DNA of 63,450 bases, filler included, from Octopus bimaculoides (taxonomy: Eukaryota), in NCBI RefSeq assembly GCF_001194135.2. It is 5 parts of 5 records of this genome, joined end to end, with 100 filler letters (N's around TTAATTAATTAA, not from the genome) between each part and the next. Parts side by side here need not be neighbours in the genome. Positions count along the whole stretch, not along the records: positions 1 to 16,492 come from NC_068991.1; 4 more parts are not named here. One strand, 5' to 3'. Both the position numbers and the translations under genes were made by a program. The stretch's first letter is position 1; each line of letters starts with the position of its first letter. The notes beneath the pieces were generated by a model that saw only the letters and a list, made by a program, of their open reading frames with translations, was not told the DNA's origin and did not search any database. Of this stretch, positions 703-14,790 are shown piece by piece.

Positions 703-753
703 CAACGAGCTTCTTTCAATTTCCAGAACAATGTGTTTGGGAAGCAAGCTTCT
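703..753 (-). mobile_element. 3' remainder of SINE family A, internally deleted
   Basis: Minus strand AGAAGCTTGCTTCC-CAAACACATTGTTCT-GGAAATTGAAAGAAGCTCGTTG-(TA)n matches the post-target and terminal parts of family A copies at 29556-29718, 35551-35706 and 44581-44750. Confidence 0.8.
740..753 (-). repeat. Target-site duplication copy 3 (AGAAGCTTGCTTCC)
   Basis: Plus strand GGAAGCAAGCTTCT at 740-753, identical to 2915-2928. Confidence 0.85.
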
Positions 754-1419
754 TTATTTCATTAAATTGGCTATAATGGCCTTGCATAGAGAAAGAAGCT
801 GCGGGCTTGATACAGACATAATGTCATATGAGATGAGAAGTGAAAATGATGATTAATGGGGGAAACAGACAACGCCCGCCGATTGTTGTTTCCCGAAAAC
901 ATTGTTCTCTTATTTATCATACATAAGGCAATAAACCTCTTACAATTGTTCATAATTGTTCATTAAAACACAAAATTGAGGTACTACGCCTCGTACCCTG
1001 GTTAAAAACAGGATGAGGTTTCAAACCTCTTATCAATTCACCATATCGAGGCTTTCCAACTTCTTACCCATATTCCTCTTCGGTATCGCTTGGGACCCCG
1101 TACCCTGCCATTTCGTGCGCCTCACTCAAGCACAAAGCGGGTGACGTGTCGGGACCGCCCGGCCACAAGCGATATGGTGGCAGAGGATGACTTAATTCAC
1201 TTAAAAGTGAACAATTTTGACCGACTGTAGGCAGTCCAGAATCCAGTGAGGATTTCTTGTTTGTACAAAAAATAATACAGCAAACAACAAACCCCCACTG
1301 GACCCCAAAACAAAAGTCTTACCTTACAGCTGAGCTTCGTTTTCAATCAATATTTTGCTAGTTGTATACCAGCGTGACGACTTCTGCAGTGTAAGAACAG
1401 CACTGGCACAACCGGAAAC
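754..1419 (-). mobile_element. Short (666 bp) non-autonomous non-LTR element B
   Basis: Bounded on both sides by the target duplication; 3' end GCCATTATAGCCAATTTAATGAAATAA resembles that of element A; no long ORF. Confidence 0.7.
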
Positions 1420-1433
1420 GGAAGCAAGCCTCT
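1420..1433 (-). repeat. Target-site duplication copy 2 (AGAGGCTTGCTTCC, 1 mismatch)
   Basis: Plus strand GGAAGCAAGCCTCT at 1420-1433, followed by TTATTTCA as at 754-761. Confidence 0.8.
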
Positions 1434-2914
1434 TTATTTCAATATTTTTGCCATAAAGGCATTACACAGAGGGAACACTACAACACATGTGGGGACATAT
1501 AACAATTAAAAATATAAAAATAAAATATATAATGAATGATATATGAAAATGCACGTGAATAACAAATTAAAAATATGATAACATGAATGATATCTGNNNN
1601 NNNNNNNNNNNNNNNNNNNNNNNNNNNNNNNNNNNNNNNNNNNNNNNNNNNNNNNNNNNNNNNNNNNNNNNNNNNNNNNNNNNNNNNNNNNNNNNNNNNN
1701 NNNNNNNNNNNNNNNNNNNNNNNNNNNNNNNNNNNNNNNNNNNNNNNNNNNNNNNNNNNNNNNNNNNNNNNNNNNNNNNNNNNNNNNNNNNNNNNNNNNN
1801 NNNNNNNNNNNNNNNNNNNNNNNNNNNNNNNNNNNNNNNNNNNNNNCGGGAGGGGGTATCCTTTCTTTTTCTTTTTTTTCTCTTGTGGGGAAATGGGGTG
1901 GGTGGGTTTGGTGTCTGTATGGGGAGGGTGGGTCTGAGTGGTCTTGGGTGGGATGGAGTTGGACTGGGGTACCACATCATACTCAGTGTCTTTTCTTTTT
2001 TTCCTCTTTCTCCTTCTGCTCCCTGAAACTTTCCTGTCTTCCTCTTTTTCTCCTTTCCTCCGTCTGTCTTTTCTTCCTCTCTTTTCTCTTCCGTCTCCAC
2101 GACTGCATATTGAGCCCTTGTCCTCTATAGGGGGAAGTATGCTCTAATGTGGCCATTGTGGCCACACATTTAAAACAACGTGGTACTCTGTCCTCTACCC
2201 ACTCCCTCAGCACGTCTCTGCCAAGTTCTCGAGATGACCCGCCTCCGCTTGAATGATTAGTTCTTGTGTCCTTCCTTTCCACCCTCCTTCTTCTGTTTCT
2301 GTGGCTTGGAGGACAGCTACCTCCTCCTCGCTTCCAACAATTGCTTCTACCCTCACCTTGGAAGTCTTTCTTCCAAGGTATGTGTGCAGAAGCACTACCT
2401 CCTCTATTTTCACCGCCACACTCGCTAACCTCCTCGCCTCCTCTACTGTTCTAAATTGTACGGCCATTGTGCCATATTTTCTTCCTTTCGTCATGTATAT
2501 TATTTCTTTCGACTTTTCTCTTAGTGCTTTGTCCATTTCAGCTTCCACCTGCTTGGCCTTTCTCCCTTTTAGCAAGAACACCTTATAGGTGATCGTTCTT
2601 CTTTCCATTGGCTCCATAACTCCTTTGCGGGGAGACAGTTTCACTTCCCCTCCCACCTTCTGTACCATCTTCTCATATTCCTTCAGACCGGCCAAGTCCA
2701 ACTCCCTTCGCTTCATCTCCGTAACCCCAGCAAAACTCTTTGTCTTTTCCAACACTCCGTCCATCTCTATGACTGCCCTTACCAGCTCTTCCTCTGCTGA
2801 AGACAACTCAGACCCGCTAAAATCTGAGTACATTGTCTCTATTCTCAAAGCAGCAACAAACACCAACGTCCGACACAACTGACAAACCAAATGCACTCTG
2901 GGTGACGCATGCGC
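1434..2914 (-). mobile_element. Non-LTR retroelement A, Tx1/L1-like ORF1; ORF2 not visible
   Basis: Short 5' leader, decayed gag-like ORF1, 251-N gap (1597-1847), AT-rich 3' end ...GCCTTTATGGCAAAAATATTGAAATAA; flanked by target duplications. Confidence 0.75.
1983..2833 (-). pseudogene. ORF1 (nucleic-acid-binding, RRM-like plus CCHC zinc knuckle), frameshifted
   Basis: ATG at 2833 (MYSDFSGSELSSAEEE...); RRM-like YGTMAVQFRTVEEARRLA; after frameshifts EDRVPRCFKC-GHNGHIRAYFP (last Cys lost), then a K/R/E-rich tail. Confidence 0.7.
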
Positions 2915-2951
2915 GGAAGCAAGCTTCTCACCATACAGCCACGCCTGCGCC
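2915..2951 (-). mobile_element. 5' head of SINE family A plus target-site duplication copy 1 (2915-2928)
   Basis: Minus strand GGCGCAGGCGTGGCTGTATGGTG-AGAAGCTTGCTTCC; A-box-like TGGCTGTATGG; matches heads of other family A copies in the window. Confidence 0.85.
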
Positions 2952-2959
2952 AATGTGTT

Positions 2960-2964
<5 letters not shown>

Positions 2965-3032
<68 letters not shown>
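2965..3032. repeat. (TG)n microsatellite
   Basis: Directly visible. Confidence 0.98.
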
Positions 3033-3052: not shown

Positions 3053-3941
3053 GTAACGTAAGATAAAAGATCAGTTTCAATAAGCCATATACACTACAAT
3101 ATGTATTGAGCATTCCCCTGTGATGTTTTCGACACAATTTAACATTTGTTAATGTATATAGCTCTTTACGTCTTAACAGACAGTGTAAGCGGCGGAGAAT
3201 GTCTTAATTATGTACTCGTAGTCTTCTTCCTGCAGCTTCTCTCGTGGCTTCCTATATTTGATGAGCAAGTTCTGCTGCAAAATCTGCAAGCAAGGAAGGT
3301 GCTACAGGGCTGCAGTGAGCTATCTTTCTTTCTTTGGCATTTTACCTTGAGTTGTTTGACTCCTTTGTTCACTGAAATTTTCCATACTCTTCTGTCTTCA
3401 GCTAACTTTTCTCAACTCTTTGCATTGATGTGGCATTCGGTCAGGCTCCTCTTACACGTATACTTGAATCTCGGCTTTGGTCCTCCTCTGAATCTGCTAC
3501 CCTGAGCCAACTCACCATATAACAACTGCTTTGGAATTCCGTTGTCATCCATCCACTTCACATGCACAAGCCATCTTGGTCTCCTTTTGCACAGAATAGT
3601 TCTCATGCTCTGAAGTGCTGCCTGTTTCAGGACTTTTGTGTTTTTAGCTGTCCATATGGAACAAATAAACCTCCCTCAATACCGCCAAATTCCACTCAGT
3701 GGCCACATAGACTCTTGCGCCAGAAACAAAAACCCTAAATTCATTATATTCCCTTTCTATCAATGTAAAGACAGATTCTCCACACAAGAAAGAATCAACA
3801 AGGTGAATCTTTTCATAGAGAAATTCCAACCATTTCTTAACACACACACACCTCAGTGACCTTATTTCTCTATGAACAGACATAAACTTCCTGTTGGGAA
3901 AAAAAGAGTTCATAACTCTAACTAAAAACACTTGTCTCCCC
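3053..3941 (-). mobile_element. RTE-clade LINE, decayed 3' fragment
   Basis: RRPRWLVHVKWMDDNGIPKQLLYGELAQGSRFRGGPKPRFK; EKLAEDRRVWK; C-terminal CRFCSRTCSSNIGSHERSC zinc-finger-like motif; stops and frameshifts. Confidence 0.85.
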
Positions 3942-8999: not shown

Positions 9000-9560
9000 A
9001 AGTTGTGACATGCACATGCAACGGTGATTACGAACCTGTGACCAGCAGGAAATTGATGGTCTTCGCGTGTGTTTCCCGTAAGGGTGACGTCATGCAGCCT
9101 AGCATCTTTGATCAGAGCCTTAGTCTCAATCAGACAGCTATGTAAAGCCATTGTAGACAACGGCGACTCCTTGACTGGAAAGGCTTGCTGCCGGAAGGAC
9201 ATGTGTGACAGCAGGGTTCGGCTTCTTGCCATACTTCCGGAAATAGTCAGAATTAAATTGTCGGGGAATTTCTACGAGTTCACTTGTGCCAATTCTTGGC
9301 CTGCTAATTGCCCCGATTATTATCCCATGGGTTACTGAGTGAGGTGCGATTGAGAAAGACCACAACTGCTTTGTCAGCAACACCAAGGCTGAGCTGGCGG
9401 GCAAGATCAAGTAGGTGTTCAAAAATCTTTCTAGAGACACGCTCAGGAACGCATGTGCCAGGTCCGGAGCTGTCTTAAGATTCTGATGGGAGCTGAGGGC
9501 AGCTACTTCGAATAAACTATTATCTCCCAGCCATAATCTAGTTGGCATTAAAATTTTTTT
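9000..9560 (+). mobile_element. Tc1/mariner (DD37D/maT-like) transposase, decayed C-terminal half
   Basis: LMVFACVSRKGDVMQP...GHV*QQGSASCHTS...NFYEFTCANSWPANCPDYYPMGY...RNACAR; multiple stops and frameshifts. Confidence 0.8.
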
Positions 9561-9689
9561 TTAAAGCTCTTACTTTTGGATATTTTGTAAACAAAGCGAC
9601 CATCAGTCACTGATTTGCAACAAGCAAAATAACTAGTTGGCTCATCCTCAGTCGCGAGCACCCGTCTAGTATTGAAAACCTATCAGGCT

Positions 9690-10771
9690 TCCTTATTTGC
9701 ATATTTGCCATTCGTGAGGTGAAGACACTTTAGAATTGTCTATTTAGCACTTCAAGTACCCCTGGGTCTGTAGTTAGTGAGCCGTCTTCTTCAAACAGTG
9801 GCCCTATCTTATGCTGCGAGGCAGATTCTTTCGCAAACTTGTAGAAAACTTTAGGATTAATTTTTATATTTTTCGACGCCTTGAATTTTTCTTTCTATCC
9901 TTACTGTTTCATGGGAGAGTTTGAGTTTATTTTCGATCTCTAAAAGTGCCTCTTTGAGGAGGGATTTCTTGTTGTCAGTAAGTTGTTATATTTAAGCGAT
10001 TGGAGATCTTTATTCTTGGTCTCATAAGGACTCTCCTGTCTTCAGGAATGATGTCTTTGTAAGTATGGCTCGATTCTCTGGAACAAATTCAATGCATATG
10101 ACTGACATTATTGACATAAATTTTTAAAGTTTCATATCAATGACTTGTACAGAGATACCTTTAAGCCAATTCTGCTGGAGTATCTGTTTTTCAATTGACT
10201 TCCAGTCAGCCTTATCGAAGTTCAAACAGGCTGAGGTTTGGGTGCCATCAGTATGGAATACATCATTAACTAGTTTTGGACCATATCTCATCAGTTTTAT
10301 CATATTGTGATAAAATTGTCTGAGAAGATTGTTGGTGATATTTTCATATTTTGGATAAGTTCCACATTGCTGTTGAATCAGAAGTCTGATGTGTTATTGT
10401 TTCTGATTGGGGAAAGTATGGCTTCCTCCATGAACAACATTTTCCTGTGATCAAGTAAAGATTCTGCTTCATTGCGCTTTTGTGGCCATCTGATGTTGCA
10501 CGGGTTGAAATCACACATCAGAAGTATATTAATGCATTGATCTAGTTTTGTTAGTTCTTCTTTTATCAGCATAAGGTTCTCCTCAAATTTACCATTGTGA
10601 TTTGCGGCATTGGTTTGGCGATTAAGTATGCATATTACCACATCAAGTTGCTTCAAATGCACTATGAGTATGTCACAGACTAAGCTTGAATGTGACAACA
10701 AGGTTAGTGGTGTAACATCTTTGCAGATGTACAACGCAACTCCACCTTGACTCCTTTCTTTTCTGTCTGCA
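9690..10771 (-). mobile_element. CR1/L2-group LINE fragment (APE endonuclease plus linker)
   Basis: RADRKERSQGGVALYI; LLMCDFNP; FDKADWKSIE; KINPKVFYKFAK...IGPLFEEDGSLTTDP...LNRQF*SVFT. Confidence 0.85.
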
Positions 10772-11093
10772 CGGACATGGTGATCTCATATCAAGATAAA
10801 CGGCGCATGATCTTACAAGTGGAGCCCAATTAGAATATTCTGCGGGCCGAATAACCCCTCCCGATCAAAAGGTCCCTGAATAAGGGTTGTTTAAGGATGT
10901 TGAGCGAAACACCCATGTTTCCAAAGGTGAATTACCCAAACCGCAAAGAACTCCTCTCAACACATGGCTATGATGCTCCCCCAGTACTTCTGCCCGTGAA
11001 CAGAGATGCACATATCGTCAGCCACTAAGGGACATGCTCAACTGGTTAAGATCAAACAACTGACAAGCAAATCTGTAGTATTTGCTGTAGCCC
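10772..11093. repeat. Interspersed repeat with a second copy at 32775-32935
   Basis: Shared CCCTGAATAAGG(G/T)TTGTTTAAGGATGTT...CACCCATG(T/C)TTCCAAAGGTGAATTA. Confidence 0.75.
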
Positions 11094-12110: not shown

Positions 12111-12380
12111 TTTTCCCATTTTTCTCGAGCCTCAACCTAATACACCTGCTGATTGTTCCCTCGCCTGTCTCTATCTTTTGTTTTCTGTATATATAATCCC
12201 ATCCCTCCAATCCCATCTAGGAGTGATAAACATCGATGTGAGTTATCTCACTTGCTCATGATTTTCAGGTGTGTTAACATTTGGTGCCTTGAGAGAGTAT
12301 TCTCCCCCGCACCAAATCACAGCGTGCCGGCAAATACACGGTGTTTTTACATTAAGTATATGTGGTTGATAATGTTTATT

Positions 12381-13813
12381 CTTTTCTACTCTAGGCACAA
12401 GGTCCGAAATTTGTGGGGCGGGGGCCAGTCGATTACATCGATCCCAGTACGCAACTGGTACTTAATTTATCGACCCCGAAAGAATGAAAGGTAAAGTCGA
12501 CCTCGGCGGAATTTTAACTCAGAACGTAAAGACAGACGAAATACCGCTAAGCATTTCGCTAAGCATCTCGCTAAGCATTTCGCTAAGCATTTCGCTAAGC
12601 ATCTCGCTAAGCATTTCGTTAAGCATTTCGCTAAGCATTTCGCTAAGCATTTCGCTAAGCATTTCGCTAAGCATTTCGNNNNNNNNNNNNNNNNNNNNNN
12701 NNNNNNNNNNNNNNNNNNNNNNNNNNNNNNNNNNNNNNNNNNNNNNNNNNNNNNNNNNNNNNNNNNNNNNNNNNNNNNNNNNNNNNNNNNNNNNNNNNNN
12801 NNNNNNNNNNNNNNNNNNNNNNNNNNNNNNNNNNNNNNNNNNNNNNNNNNNNNNNNNNNNNNNNNNNNNNNNNNNNNNNNNNNNNNNNNNNNNNNNNNNN
12901 NNNNNNNNNNNNNNNNNNNNNNNNNNNNNNNNNNNNNNNNNNNNNNNNNNNNNNNNNNNNNNNNNNNNNNNNNNNNNNNNNNNNNNNNNNNNNNNNNNNN
13001 NNNNNNNNNNNNNNNNNNNNNNNNNNNNNNNNNNNNNNNNNNNNNNNNNNNNNNNNNNNNNNNNNNNNNNNNNNNNNNNNNNNNNNNNNNNNNNNNNNNN
13101 NNNNNNNNNNNNNNNNNNNNNNNNNNNNNNNNNNNNNNNNNNNNNNNNNNNNNNNNNNNNNNNNNNNNNNNNNNNNNNNNNNNNNNNNNNNNNNNNNNNN
13201 NNNNNNNNNNNNNNNNNNNNNNNNNNNNNNNNNNNNNNNNNNNNNNNNNNNNNNNNNNNNNNNNNNNNNNNNNNNNNNNNNNNNNNNNNNNNNNNNNNNN
13301 NNNNNNNNNNNNNNNNNNNNNNNNNNNNNNNNNNNNNNNNNNNNNNNNNNNNNNNNNNNNNNNNNNNNNNNNNNNNNNNNNNNNNNNNNNNNNNNNNNNN
13401 NNNNNNNNNNNNNNNNNNNNNNNNNNNNNNNNNNNNNNNNNNNNNNNNNNNNNNNNNNNNNNNNNNNNNNNNNNNNNNNNNNNNNNNNNNNNNNNNNNNN
13501 NNNNNNNNNNNNNNNNNNNNNNNNNNNNNNNNNNNNNNNNNNNNNNNNNNNNNNNNNNNNNNNNNNNNNNNNNNNNNNNNNNNNNNNNNNNNNNNNNNNN
13601 NNNNNNNNNNNNNNNNNNNNNNNNNNNNNNNNNNNNNNNNNNNNTTTCGCTAAGCATTTCGCTAAGCATTTCGCTAAGCATTTCGCTAAGCATTTCGCTA
13701 AGCATTTCGCTAAGCATTTCGCTAAGCATTTCGCTAAGCATTTCGCTAAGCATTTCGCTAAGCATTTCGCTAAGCATTTCGGCGTGCTAACGTTTCTGCC
13801 AGCTTGCCGCCTT
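12381..13813 (-). mobile_element. SINE family B with 15-bp TSD and internal minisatellite
   Basis: TTGATAATGTTTATT at 12366-12380 and 13815-13829; B-box-like GTTAAAATTCC; body matches copies at 16721 and 55030. Confidence 0.9.
12547..13780. repeat. 12-bp minisatellite (GCTAAGCATTTC)n spanning a gap
   Basis: About 11 units left and about 11 units right of the N run 12679-13644. Confidence 0.95.
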
Positions 13814-14156
13814 ATTGATAATGTTTATTACACTAGCGGTGCTTCTATTTCATATTTGAATGTATTCTTGCATACCTGCACATTGTTTGCACGTTATGAG
13901 CAGGTAAGTCGTGGACTGTCAAAATGATCCATCTCCGATCCTGTTCGGGTACGTGATGTTGATAAGCCACAAAAATGGAGTTACATAAATGTCCATCACT
14001 CCTAGATGGGATTAGAAGTTGAGTTGTCTTGGCTGTCTATGAATTTCAAGTGTTTTAACACCTGGCACTTTGAGAGAGTATTCTCCACTGCACCAAATCA
14101 CAGTCTACCGGAAAAATACTCAAAGCATATATATAAAGTATATGTGGGTGATTATG

Positions 14157-14738: not shown

Positions 14739-14790
14739 AGGTTAGGGTTAGGTTTAGGGTTAGGTTTAGGGTTAGGTTTAAGGGTTAGGG
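14739..14790 (+). repeat. Telomere-like (TTAGGG/TTAGGT) interstitial repeat
   Basis: GGTTAGGGTTAGGTTTAGGGTTAGGTTTAGGGTTAGGTTTAAGGGTTAGGG. Confidence 0.85.

What the first reader, a model, noticed from the sequence alone, without database searches (positions are those of the whole stretch)
703..2951. Two different retroelements inserted in tandem at one site inside a tRNA-derived SINE: candidate SINE-targeting retrotransposon system
Seen, on the minus strand: SINE-A head (2951-2929), T (2928-2915), element A (2914-1434), T' (1433-1420), element B (1419-754), T (753-740), SINE-A remainder, then (TA)n. T = AGAAGCTTGCTTCC and T' has one mismatch. Other family A copies in the window (29556, 35551, 44581) have this site single and uninterrupted. 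Established: Tx1-clade LINEs are often sequence-specific (U2 snRNA, tRNA arrays, microsatellites) and repeated insertion yields target-separated tandems. Inference: a site-specific family exploits a very abundant SINE as a self-renewing safe target. I am not aware of this being described in cephalopods but cannot check.
Basis: partly seen in the sequence, partly recalled or inferred. Interest (0 to 1): 0.9.

Follow-up and report, generated by a model that had tools for sequence, protein, structure and literature searches.

The report
Two LINE-derived elements stacked in an octopus SINE
Two different non-autonomous relatives of an octopus L1/Tx1-type jumping gene sit head-to-tail at exactly the same 14-15 bp site inside a short repeat (SINE), the known signature of sequence-targeted LINE insertion, here probably with a new kind of target.

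Summary
On the minus strand the order is SINE head, T, element A, T', element B, T, SINE remainder. The 14-mer occurs three times against 0.1 expected. Element A is a decayed ORF1-only derivative of an octopus L1/Tx1-type LINE, made of a 5'UTR, an RRM+CCHC ORF1 and a 3'UTR. Homologous short elements in O. sinensis and O. bimaculoides have the same architecture. They imply about 290 bp under the 250-N gap, so no ORF2 need be hidden there. Element B is non-coding and shares only A's terminal ~38 nt. Four related octopus loci show that this lineage behaves like known target-specific Tx1 elements: 12-17 bp duplications, head-to-tail arrays separated by short target sequences, and insertion into other repeats. 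T occurs uninterrupted in other copies of the SINE. Specificity of A and B for this SINE still rests on one locus. An unreported 11-nt direct repeat flanks the whole block, so the block may have moved as a unit. I found no published description in cephalopods or of a SINE as a Tx1 target. Verdict: new member of a known kind, moderate interest.

The parts
2954..3032 (-). (CA)n microsatellite immediately 5' of the structure (context)
2951..2961 (-). X copy 1: CAAACACATTG. Its last G is the first base of the SINE head
2929..2951 (-). SINE-A head, GGCGCAGGCGTGGCTGTATGGTG, with the A-box-like TGGCTGTATGG
   Evidence: Typical copies in L002 and L004:
2915..2928 (-). T copy 1, AGAAGCTTGCTTCC (target-site sequence, native to the SINE)
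2834..2914 (-). Element A 5'UTR (81 nt), starting GCGCATGCG
1847..2833 (-). Element A ORF1, decayed. It is open from ATG 2833 to the stop at 2207. It then continues through at least 3 frame changes (CCHC knuckle remnant RCFKC/GHNGHIRAY, P/T-rich region) up to the gap
1597..1846 (.). Assembly gap (250 N). Homologous short elements imply about 290 bp here, holding the ORF1 C-terminus and the start of the 3'UTR
1434..1596 (-). Element A 3'UTR and LINE-type tail, ending ...TGGCAAAAATATTGAAATAA
   Evidence: E 1.6e-8 with a model built without the window rows
1420..1433 (-). T' AGAGGCTTGCTTCC (one A>G change), sandwiched between A and B
754..1419 (-). Element B: 666-bp non-coding element. It starts GTTTCCGG, and its last 38 nt are 76% identical, in register, to A's tail
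740..753 (-). T copy 3, AGAAGCTTGCTTCC
729..739 (-). X copy 2, CAAACACATTG (the SINE sequence that follows T)
703..739 (-). SINE-A remainder, internally deleted (the B-box region is missing), followed by the (TA)n tail to about 688

Best explanation
A copy of the abundant octopus SINE (SINE-A) was hit twice at the same position by target-primed reverse transcription carried out by an L1/Tx1-type LINE. The machinery has an APE endonuclease, a reverse transcriptase and an RRM+CCHC ORF1.

Proposed mechanism:
1. The endonuclease nicks the bottom strand opposite ...GGTG^(A)AGAAGC.
2. It nicks the top strand 14-15 nt downstream, after ...GCTTCC^.
3. Each insertion therefore duplicates T.
4. The second insertion used one of the two T copies left by the first, which gives T-A-T'-B-T.

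The inserted RNAs were non-autonomous. A is an ORF1-only, ORF2-less ('half-LINE') derivative. B is a non-coding element that carries the same kind of 3' tail. Both were mobilised in trans by an autonomous partner that has not been found.

Shown: the anatomy; the lineage identity of A; the tail shared by A and B; and the target-specific, array-forming behaviour of related octopus elements.

Inferred: the nick positions; sequential insertion at this locus; and specificity of families A and B for the SINE-A site.
For: - T occurs three times and is significant.
- T is native to a SINE-A subfamily and is uninterrupted elsewhere (L004 3391 exact, 7291 with 1 mismatch).
- A's ORF1 has relatives only in Octopus species. 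Those relatives lie directly upstream of an ORF2 collinear with human L1 ORF2p over APE+RT (E 2e-71, against 1e-24 for R2).
- A's tail matches a profile of tails from other octopus loci (E 1.6e-8; it is the only hit that passes the inclusion threshold in the window).
- B's last 38 nt match A's last 38 nt in register at 29/38. No other 38-mer among 28,954 in the window reaches that.
- The tails of relatives are followed by unrelated flanks, so T is not part of the tail consensus.
- Relatives make perfect or near-perfect duplications of 12-17 nt (L005 2479/4186; L003 9762/10673 and 9512/9602).
- Relatives also form head-to-tail arrays separated by short target sequences. L002 holds 3 copies with a 5279-bp period. 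L005 holds 5 elements of different types separated by AACYGAATACTCGTCAT.
- ORF2-less relatives with the same architecture exist: L005 2495-4185 with an intact 462-aa ORF1, and L003 E1.
- Tx1 elements that target other transposons, and tandem insertions sandwiching a duplication, are documented (PMC4494074).
- O. vulgaris has 13 recently active L1-Tx1 families (PMC13282606).
Against: - There is only one locus. No second A or B copy could be retrieved, so flanks could not be tabulated.
- About 15 SINE-A copies in 87 kb of other octopus DNA are all unoccupied.
- None of the related elements examined sits in the SINE-A T site.
- An 11-nt direct repeat brackets head-T-A-T'-B-T. It is very unlikely by chance, and this model does not explain it.
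- B's tail is not found by the profile built without the window rows.
- A's two halves are joined only by scaffolding across the gap.
- No ORF2 of the A family was seen, so placement in the Tx1 clade is indirect.
Confidence: 0.55

Rival explanations
1. The whole block (SINE head, T, A, T', B, T) is one retrotransposed unit. It was copied from a donor SINE-A that already carried A and B. It inserted with an 11-bp target-site duplication (CAAACACATTG) into a 5'-truncated SINE-A fragment lying next to (CA)n. Priming was guided by read-through homology to the SINE sequence downstream of T. The T sandwiches were then made at the donor locus, not here.
For: - The exact 11-nt direct repeat sits immediately 5' of the head and immediately 3' of the last T.
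- The 10-mer occurs only 3 times in 208,534 positions of all DNA held, and two of those are these copies.
- The length is typical of L1-type duplications.
- L003 3760-3925 shows a 5'-truncated SINE-A joined to (CA)n near the same region. That is a precedent for the proposed empty target.
Against: - It needs an RNA that starts exactly at the SINE 5' end yet runs through A and B. Both contain T-runs that should stop Pol III (sequence).
- It needs the target fragment to begin exactly at the T|X boundary.
- The 11-mer is CA-rich and adjoins a (CA)n tract, which raises its chance or 'filler' probability.
- It still requires T-site insertions at the donor.
Confidence: 0.22
2. A single target-primed event with template switching. 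The reverse transcriptase copied B RNA, jumped to the 3' end of A RNA, and perhaps then to SINE RNA. Each RNA carried T at its 3' end because it was a read-through transcript from a T-site donor.
For: - Tx1-mobilised elements repeatedly acquire 5' additions of small RNAs (PMC4494074).
- All three units end in T.
- L005 649 shows a SINE-2 copy abutting a 5'-truncated SINE-2 without a visible duplication.
Against: - There are no extra or untemplated nucleotides at the junctions.
- Sequential insertion is the explanation favoured in the literature for identical structures.
- It still presupposes T-site donors.
Confidence: 0.08
3. Assembly artefact. The contigs either side of the gap come from different loci of the same repeat families and were mis-scaffolded, so 'element A' is not one element. 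Alternatively, repeats were collapsed.
For: - The gap 1597-1846 falls inside A.
- If the family always inserts in this SINE, any 5' junction contig and any 3' junction contig would look compatible.
- The window has four further gaps.
Against: - A3'-T'-B-T-SINE remainder is continuous sequence within one contig, so the tandem itself does not depend on the scaffold.
- Orientation, SINE halves and the 11/11 flanking repeat all agree across the gap.
- The gap estimate of 250 matches the ~290 bp predicted from homologous ORF1-only elements.
Confidence: 0.1
4. T is an intrinsic 3'-terminal part of elements A and B (for example a short hairpin), and its match to the SINE is incidental or reflects capture of SINE sequence. 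On this reading there is no target specificity.
For: - T can form a 4-bp stem with a CUUG loop, and T' keeps it through a G-U pair.
- From a single locus, 'T + element' and 'element + T' cannot be told apart.
Against: - The hairpin is weak (-1.9 kcal/mol, z -1.05).
- The tails of ten relatives end at ...AAAGAAATA and are followed by unrelated sequences.
- T is native to SINE-A copies that have no insert.
- Even on this reading, two elements landed precisely after the SINE's own T.
Confidence: 0.05

Closest known systems
Tx1-Mar LINEs and SINEU-3 inserted into Mariner-N4_AMi in crocodilians (Kojima 2015, PMC4494074)
   Same: An L1-superfamily LINE lineage plus its non-autonomous partners insert at one site of an abundant transposon. 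They make a ~16-bp duplication, and tandem insertions sandwich the duplication.
   Different: The host is a cephalopod. The target is a SINE (a retroposon), not a DNA transposon. The inserted units are an ORF1-only derivative and an unclassified non-coding element. Specificity here is seen at one locus only.
Tx1L in Tx1D (Xenopus); Keno in U2 snRNA genes; Kibi and Koshi in microsatellites (Tx1 clade, as summarised in PMC4494074)
   Same: APE-type LINEs with RRM/CCHC-type ORF1 and sequence-specific targets in repeated DNA.
   Different: No RT of the A family is available, so clade placement is not tested. The target sequence is unrelated.
HAL1 (half-L1) elements of mammals (from my own knowledge)
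   Same: A non-autonomous LINE derivative that keeps the 5'UTR, ORF1 and 3' end but lacks ORF2, and so depends on a full-length partner.
   Different: A different ORF1 type (RRM+CCHC rather than Transposase_22), and site-specific context.
R1/R2 and other rDNA-specific LINEs forming target-separated tandems (from my own knowledge; Eickbush and Fujiwara work cited in PMC4494074)
   Same: Repeated use of one target sequence. Read-through of target sequence may guide precise 3' junctions.
   Different: R2 uses a restriction-like endonuclease and a single ORF. The relatives here are APE-type and L1-like.

Membership tests
Tx1 clade / L1 superfamily non-LTR retrotransposon | RT domain groups with Tx1 in an RT phylogeny (RTclass1-type test) | not testable with these tools
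   A has no ORF2, and no reference Tx1 RT set was available. The ORF2 of a relative (L002 6058-9453) is collinear with human L1 ORF2p (E 2e-71), far better than with R2. L1-Tx1 is the only L1-like group among the recently active LINE groups listed for O. vulgaris.
Tx1 clade / L1 superfamily non-LTR retrotransposon | N-terminal APE endonuclease + RT + C-terminal CCHC in ORF2 | tested here: inconclusive
   Met in the relatives: L002 ORF2 residues 3-868 align to L1 ORF2p 6-891, and a CPRC...H...C motif is present. Absent from A itself, which is ORF2-less. The autonomous partner of A was not found.
Tx1 clade / L1 superfamily non-LTR retrotransposon | Type I ORF1 (RRM plus CCHC knuckle) | tested here: met
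   A's ORF1 aligns to octopus ORF1s that carry ...GRxPRC[FY]xCGxxGHxRAxCP. The knuckle is frameshifted in the window copy. An RRM fold was not confirmed (AlphaFold pLDDT 40.7). This ORF1 type is not exclusive to Tx1 (PMC5203782).
Target-specific LINE family (criterion of Kojima 2015: one sequence type in more than 20% of flanks) | Most or many copies flanked by the same target sequence | not testable with these tools
   No collection with octopus DNA could be searched by nucleotide pattern. Only 5 loci were reachable through proteins, and they hold no further A or B copy.
Target-specific LINE family | Tandem insertions sandwiching the target-site duplication | tested here: met
   T-A-T'-B-T in the window. 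Analogous arrays in L002 and L005.
LINE/non-autonomous partner pair sharing a 3' tail | Terminal tens of nucleotides shared between the partner elements | tested here: met
   A and B share 29/38 in register. A's tail matches the lineage profile, but B's does not. One SINE-2 subfamily ends in the same tail.
tRNA-derived SINE (the target, SINE-A) | Recognisable tRNA-related head with A and B boxes | tested here: inconclusive
   A-box-like TGGCTGTGTGG and B-box-like GGTTCAGTCCC are present in typical copies. ARAGORN and the Rfam tRNA model give no hit. The window copy has lost the B-box region.

The most novel reading that the evidence does not exclude
An octopus L1/Tx1 lineage has split into families that each home to one site in an abundant repeat: the T site of SINE-A, the GC^GGTATTT site of SINE-2, and a 17-nt site in the 5'UTR of sister LINEs. 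SINE-2 would be both a target and a partner, because one of its subfamilies carries the lineage's own 3' tail. SINE expansion would then keep supplying safe landing sites, and the lineage would build the nested and tandem repeat arrays typical of octopus genomes.
Probability: 0.3. Interest if true: 0.6.

Novelty: new member of a known kind. Interest (0 to 1): 0.4.

Why it matters
Target-specific LINEs that use other transposons as safe harbours are known from vertebrates. My literature searches found no cephalopod case and no case with a SINE as the target. If genome-wide flanks confirm it, three things would follow:

- It would help explain the nesting and tandem structure of octopus repeats, where SINEs and LINEs together make up about a quarter of the genome.
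- It would give a natural example of LINE endonuclease retargeting to a short, very abundant sequence.
- It would identify the LINE partner of one major octopus SINE through the shared 3' tail.

It does not reveal a new mechanism.

Tried and rejected
**Searches for more copies that found nothing**
- Protein-guided scan of metagenome contigs.
- Exact-pattern scans for the SINE/T site in metagenome and genome contigs. These collections appear to hold no octopus DNA.
- Exact-protein contig look-ups for the window ORF1, P0001, P0002, P0003, P0004, P0006 and P0008. None is on record.
- L001 is only a 940-bp exon contig.

**RNA and structure tests**
- Rfam over the whole window gave only microsatellite-type chance hits.
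- No tRNA was called in the window or in typical SINE copies.
- RNA folding of the tails, of T and of the joined SINE showed no significant structure.
- The AlphaFold model of ORF1 without an alignment was too poor (pLDDT 40.7) to use for a fold search.

**Leads that turned out uninformative**
- Long 'ORF1 relatives' that might have carried an ORF2 are chimeric gene models: P0036 = ORF1 + WDR64, P0003 = ORF1 + zinc fingers, P0001 = ORF1 + a cys-loop channel exon.
- BLAST of B against all loci found nothing.

**Ideas rejected**
- T as part of the tail consensus.
- The 11-nt flanking repeat as pure chance.
Full report
**1. Observation**

Read on the minus strand, the window shows this order:
- (CA)n, 3032-2954
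- GCA
- CAAACACATTG, 2961-2951
- SINE head GGCGCAGGCGTGGCTGTATGGTG, 2951-2929
- T = AGAAGCTTGCTTCC, 2928-2915
- element A, 2914-1434
- T' = AGAGGCTTGCTTCC, 1433-1420
- element B, 1419-754
- T, 753-740
- CAAACACATTG TTCTGG AAATTGAAAGAAGCTCGTTG, 739-703
- (TA)n

The 14-mer has three matches at up to 2 mismatches against 0.10 expected, and no shuffle reaches three. This piece holds no other copy of the SINE and no other copy of A or B.

**2. The gap**

The gap at 1597-1846 lies inside A. The side towards A's 5' end (2914-1847) holds an 81-nt leader and an ORF that starts MYSDFSG.... The ORF is open for 208 codons. It then continues, with at least three frame changes, through a CCHC knuckle remnant and a P/T-rich stretch right up to the gap (aligned to P0002). 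The other side (1596-1434) is AT-rich and non-coding. The reading frame therefore does not continue across the gap, and the two sides are different parts of an element.

Three results support the two sides belonging to one short element.
- A's last 52-70 nt match a profile built only from the 3' tails of related octopus elements. The match has E 1.6e-8 and is the only hit that passes the inclusion threshold in the window.
- Both sides align collinearly to an O. sinensis element, L005 2495-4185. That element is 1,691 bp and has an intact 462-aa ORF1. It has no ORF2, and a perfect 16-nt duplication flanks it. The alignment implies about 290 bp under the 250-N estimate.
- An O. bimaculoides element, L003 9774-10672, is also ORF2-less, with ORF1 joined to an A3-like 3'UTR.

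A is therefore most likely an ORF1-only 'half-LINE' of about 1.5 kb. A hidden ORF2 is not needed. The join itself is still only a scaffold link.

**3. What A and B are**

A's ORF1 has relatives only in Octopus species.
- P0003 (O. bimaculoides) is 75% identical.
- P0011 (O. vulgaris) and P0012 (O. bimaculoides) are about 37-38% identical.
- The search found 81 representative relatives in all, and all nine octopus-type relatives checked for source are from Octopus. A tenth checked hit, P0017, is a weak multi-stretch match from a tapeworm.

In O. vulgaris locus L002 the related ORF1 lies directly upstream of a 1,132-aa ORF2. This ORF2 is collinear with human L1 ORF2p across endonuclease and RT (E 2e-71). 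R2 proteins match the RT only (about 1e-24). An RRM+CCHC ORF1 is the type reported for Tx1-like elements, but it is not exclusive to them (PMC5203782). L1-Tx1 is the only L1-like group among the recently active LINE groups listed for O. vulgaris (PMC13282606). The lineage is therefore L1/Tx1-type. Strict Tx1 membership was not tested.

B has no ORF worth the name, no Rfam match, and no similarity to A except at the very end. There, the last 38 nt are 29/38 identical in register, and no other 38-mer among 28,954 in the window reaches that. The profile built without the window rows does not detect B's tail. B's link to the lineage therefore runs through A only.

**4. Is T target or element?**

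In ten related tails the consensus ends ...GCCCCTTGTGGGTAATAAAGAAATA. Unrelated sequences follow it: GGTATTT..., GGATGTG..., CCACACAAC..., AACTGAATAC..., CACTGATA.... T is therefore not part of the lineage's tail.

T is native to the SINE. O. vulgaris locus L004 has an intact copy reading ...GGCTGTGTGGTTA-AGAAGCTTGCTTCC-CAACCATGTAG..., and it also holds one-mismatch and two-mismatch variants. The commonest subfamily reads AGTAGCTTGCTTAC.

The profile places the end of A and B at GAAATA. The duplication may therefore be 15 nt, AAGA[A/G]GCTTGCTTCC.

**5. Behaviour of the lineage elsewhere**

All four large loci fetched through ORF1 relatives show the hallmarks of target-specific insertion.
- L002 (O. 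vulgaris) has three near-identical full-length copies (99.0-99.7%) head-to-tail with a 5,279-bp period. They are separated by 8-9 nt that resemble the left flank.
- L005 (O. sinensis) has five ORF1-bearing elements in one orientation. The first is the short element, with its 16-nt duplication. The full-length copies are separated by AAC[T/C]GAATACTCGTCAT. That sequence is itself part of a related LINE 5'UTR.
- L003 (O. bimaculoides) has the ORF2-less E1 with a 12-nt duplication, sitting in what looks like another LINE's 5'UTR. It also has a 74-nt tail fragment with a 16-nt duplication inside a second SINE, here called SINE-2.
- The junction tail|GGTATTT in SINE-2 recurs independently at L005 649.

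Kojima (PMC4494074) describes the same pattern for Tx1-Mar and SINEU-3 in crocodilians. There the elements insert into one site of a Mariner element with a 16-nt duplication. The tandem copies sandwiching the duplication were attributed to sequential insertion.

**6. Mechanism favoured**

The favoured mechanism is L1-type target-primed reverse transcription with staggered nicks 14-15 nt apart at the SINE-A site. It happened twice, and the second event re-used a duplicated T. A and B were supplied in trans with endonuclease and RT by an unseen autonomous partner that recognises their shared tail.

The anatomy and the lineage assignment are shown. The nick positions, the order of events and the family-level specificity are inferred.

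**7. What does not fit**

The 11-mer CAAACACATTG occurs immediately 5' of the SINE head and immediately 3' of the last T. The downstream copy is the SINE's own sequence (consensus CAACCACATGG). The 10-mer occurs only three times in 208,534 positions of all DNA held, and two of those are these copies. The arrangement looks like an 11-bp target-site duplication around the whole block.

A 5'-truncated SINE-A joined to (CA)n near this region exists in L003. An 'empty' target of that form is therefore plausible. The block may have been copied as one unit from a donor SINE that already held A and B.

This rival has its own difficulties. The RNA would have to start exactly at the SINE's 5' end, and T-runs would block Pol III. 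It also still needs T-site insertions at the donor. I give it about 0.2.

**8. Comparison and novelty**

The structure works like known target-specific Tx1 elements. The membership features I could test are:
- ORF1 type: met.
- Sandwiched duplications: met.
- Shared tail: met.
- APE+RT: met only in relatives.
- RT phylogeny and flank statistics: could not be tested.

Literature searches found no description in cephalopods. They also found no SINE among the listed Tx1 targets, which are DNA transposons, LTR elements, snRNA and 5S genes, and microsatellites.

I rate it a new member of a known kind. The concept is established. The host clade and the probable target are new. The evidence for family-level specificity is one locus.

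**9. Limits**

The decisive test, tabulating the flanks of A and B genome-wide, remains to be done.

Noticed in passing
window 2951-2961 and 729-739 (minus strand): An exact 11-nt direct repeat, CAAACACATTG, brackets the whole SINE head-T-A-T'-B-T block. It looks like a target-site duplication for the composite as one unit. It is not explained by simple sequential insertion.
   Followed up: partly
window 12381-13814 (minus strand): A copy of a second octopus SINE (SINE-2), flanked by a 15-nt duplication AATAAACATTATCAA (12366-12380, 13815-13829). Inside it, the 12-mer GAAATGCTTAGC is expanded into a long array: 22 or more copies read, plus a 966-N gap. The array ends exactly at the GC^GGTATTT position where tails of the LINE lineage are inserted in other SINE-2 copies.
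   Followed up: partly
L005 415-649, L004 16905-16974; window 12381-12530: One SINE-2 subfamily ends in the same 3' tail as the L1/Tx1-type LINEs (...TTTGTCCCCTCTGTGTTTAGCCCCTTGTGGGTAATAAAGAAATA). That implies a classical LINE/SINE partnership. The window's SINE-2 copy carries a different tail (...GGACCTTGTGCCTAGAGTAGAAAAGAAT), which suggests tail swapping.
   Followed up: partly
window ~2370-2380 (minus strand), proteins P0001 and P0003: A's ORF1 contains a consensus splice donor (AAG|GTGAGG after ...GRKTSK). P0001 is a transcript-like product in which a related ORF1 is spliced at exactly this point to an exon of a cys-loop ligand-gated channel (exon seen in L001). P0003 fuses the ORF1 to a C2H2 zinc-finger gene model. 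The element's 5' end therefore seems to act as an alternative first exon or promoter.
   Followed up: partly
L002 4445-19184 (O. vulgaris OX597840.1): A head-to-tail array of three full-length LINE copies, 99.0-99.7% identical, with intact or nearly intact ORF1 and ORF2. It looks recently active.
   Followed up: partly
L005 4202-20850 (O. sinensis CM016867.1): Full-length LINEs of at least two 5'UTR types alternate in one array. They are separated by a 17-nt sequence that is part of a sister LINE's 5'UTR, which suggests self- or sister-targeting.
   Followed up: partly
window 3230-3940 (minus strand): The decayed C-terminal end of an unrelated LINE ORF2 (...RPRWLVHVKWMDDNGIPKQLLYGEL... then a C2H2-like CRFCSRTCSSNIGSHERSC). 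Its 3'UTR runs into the (TA)n(CA)n that abuts the SINE head.
   Followed up: no
window ~9500-10900 (minus strand): A decayed 5' part (endonuclease and start of RT) of another LINE, with CR1/L2-like motifs (…LLMCDFN…, …NPKVFYKFAKE…IGPL…SVFT).
   Followed up: no
window 14740-14790: A short interstitial run of telomere-type hexamers (GGTTAG, about 8 copies).
   Followed up: no
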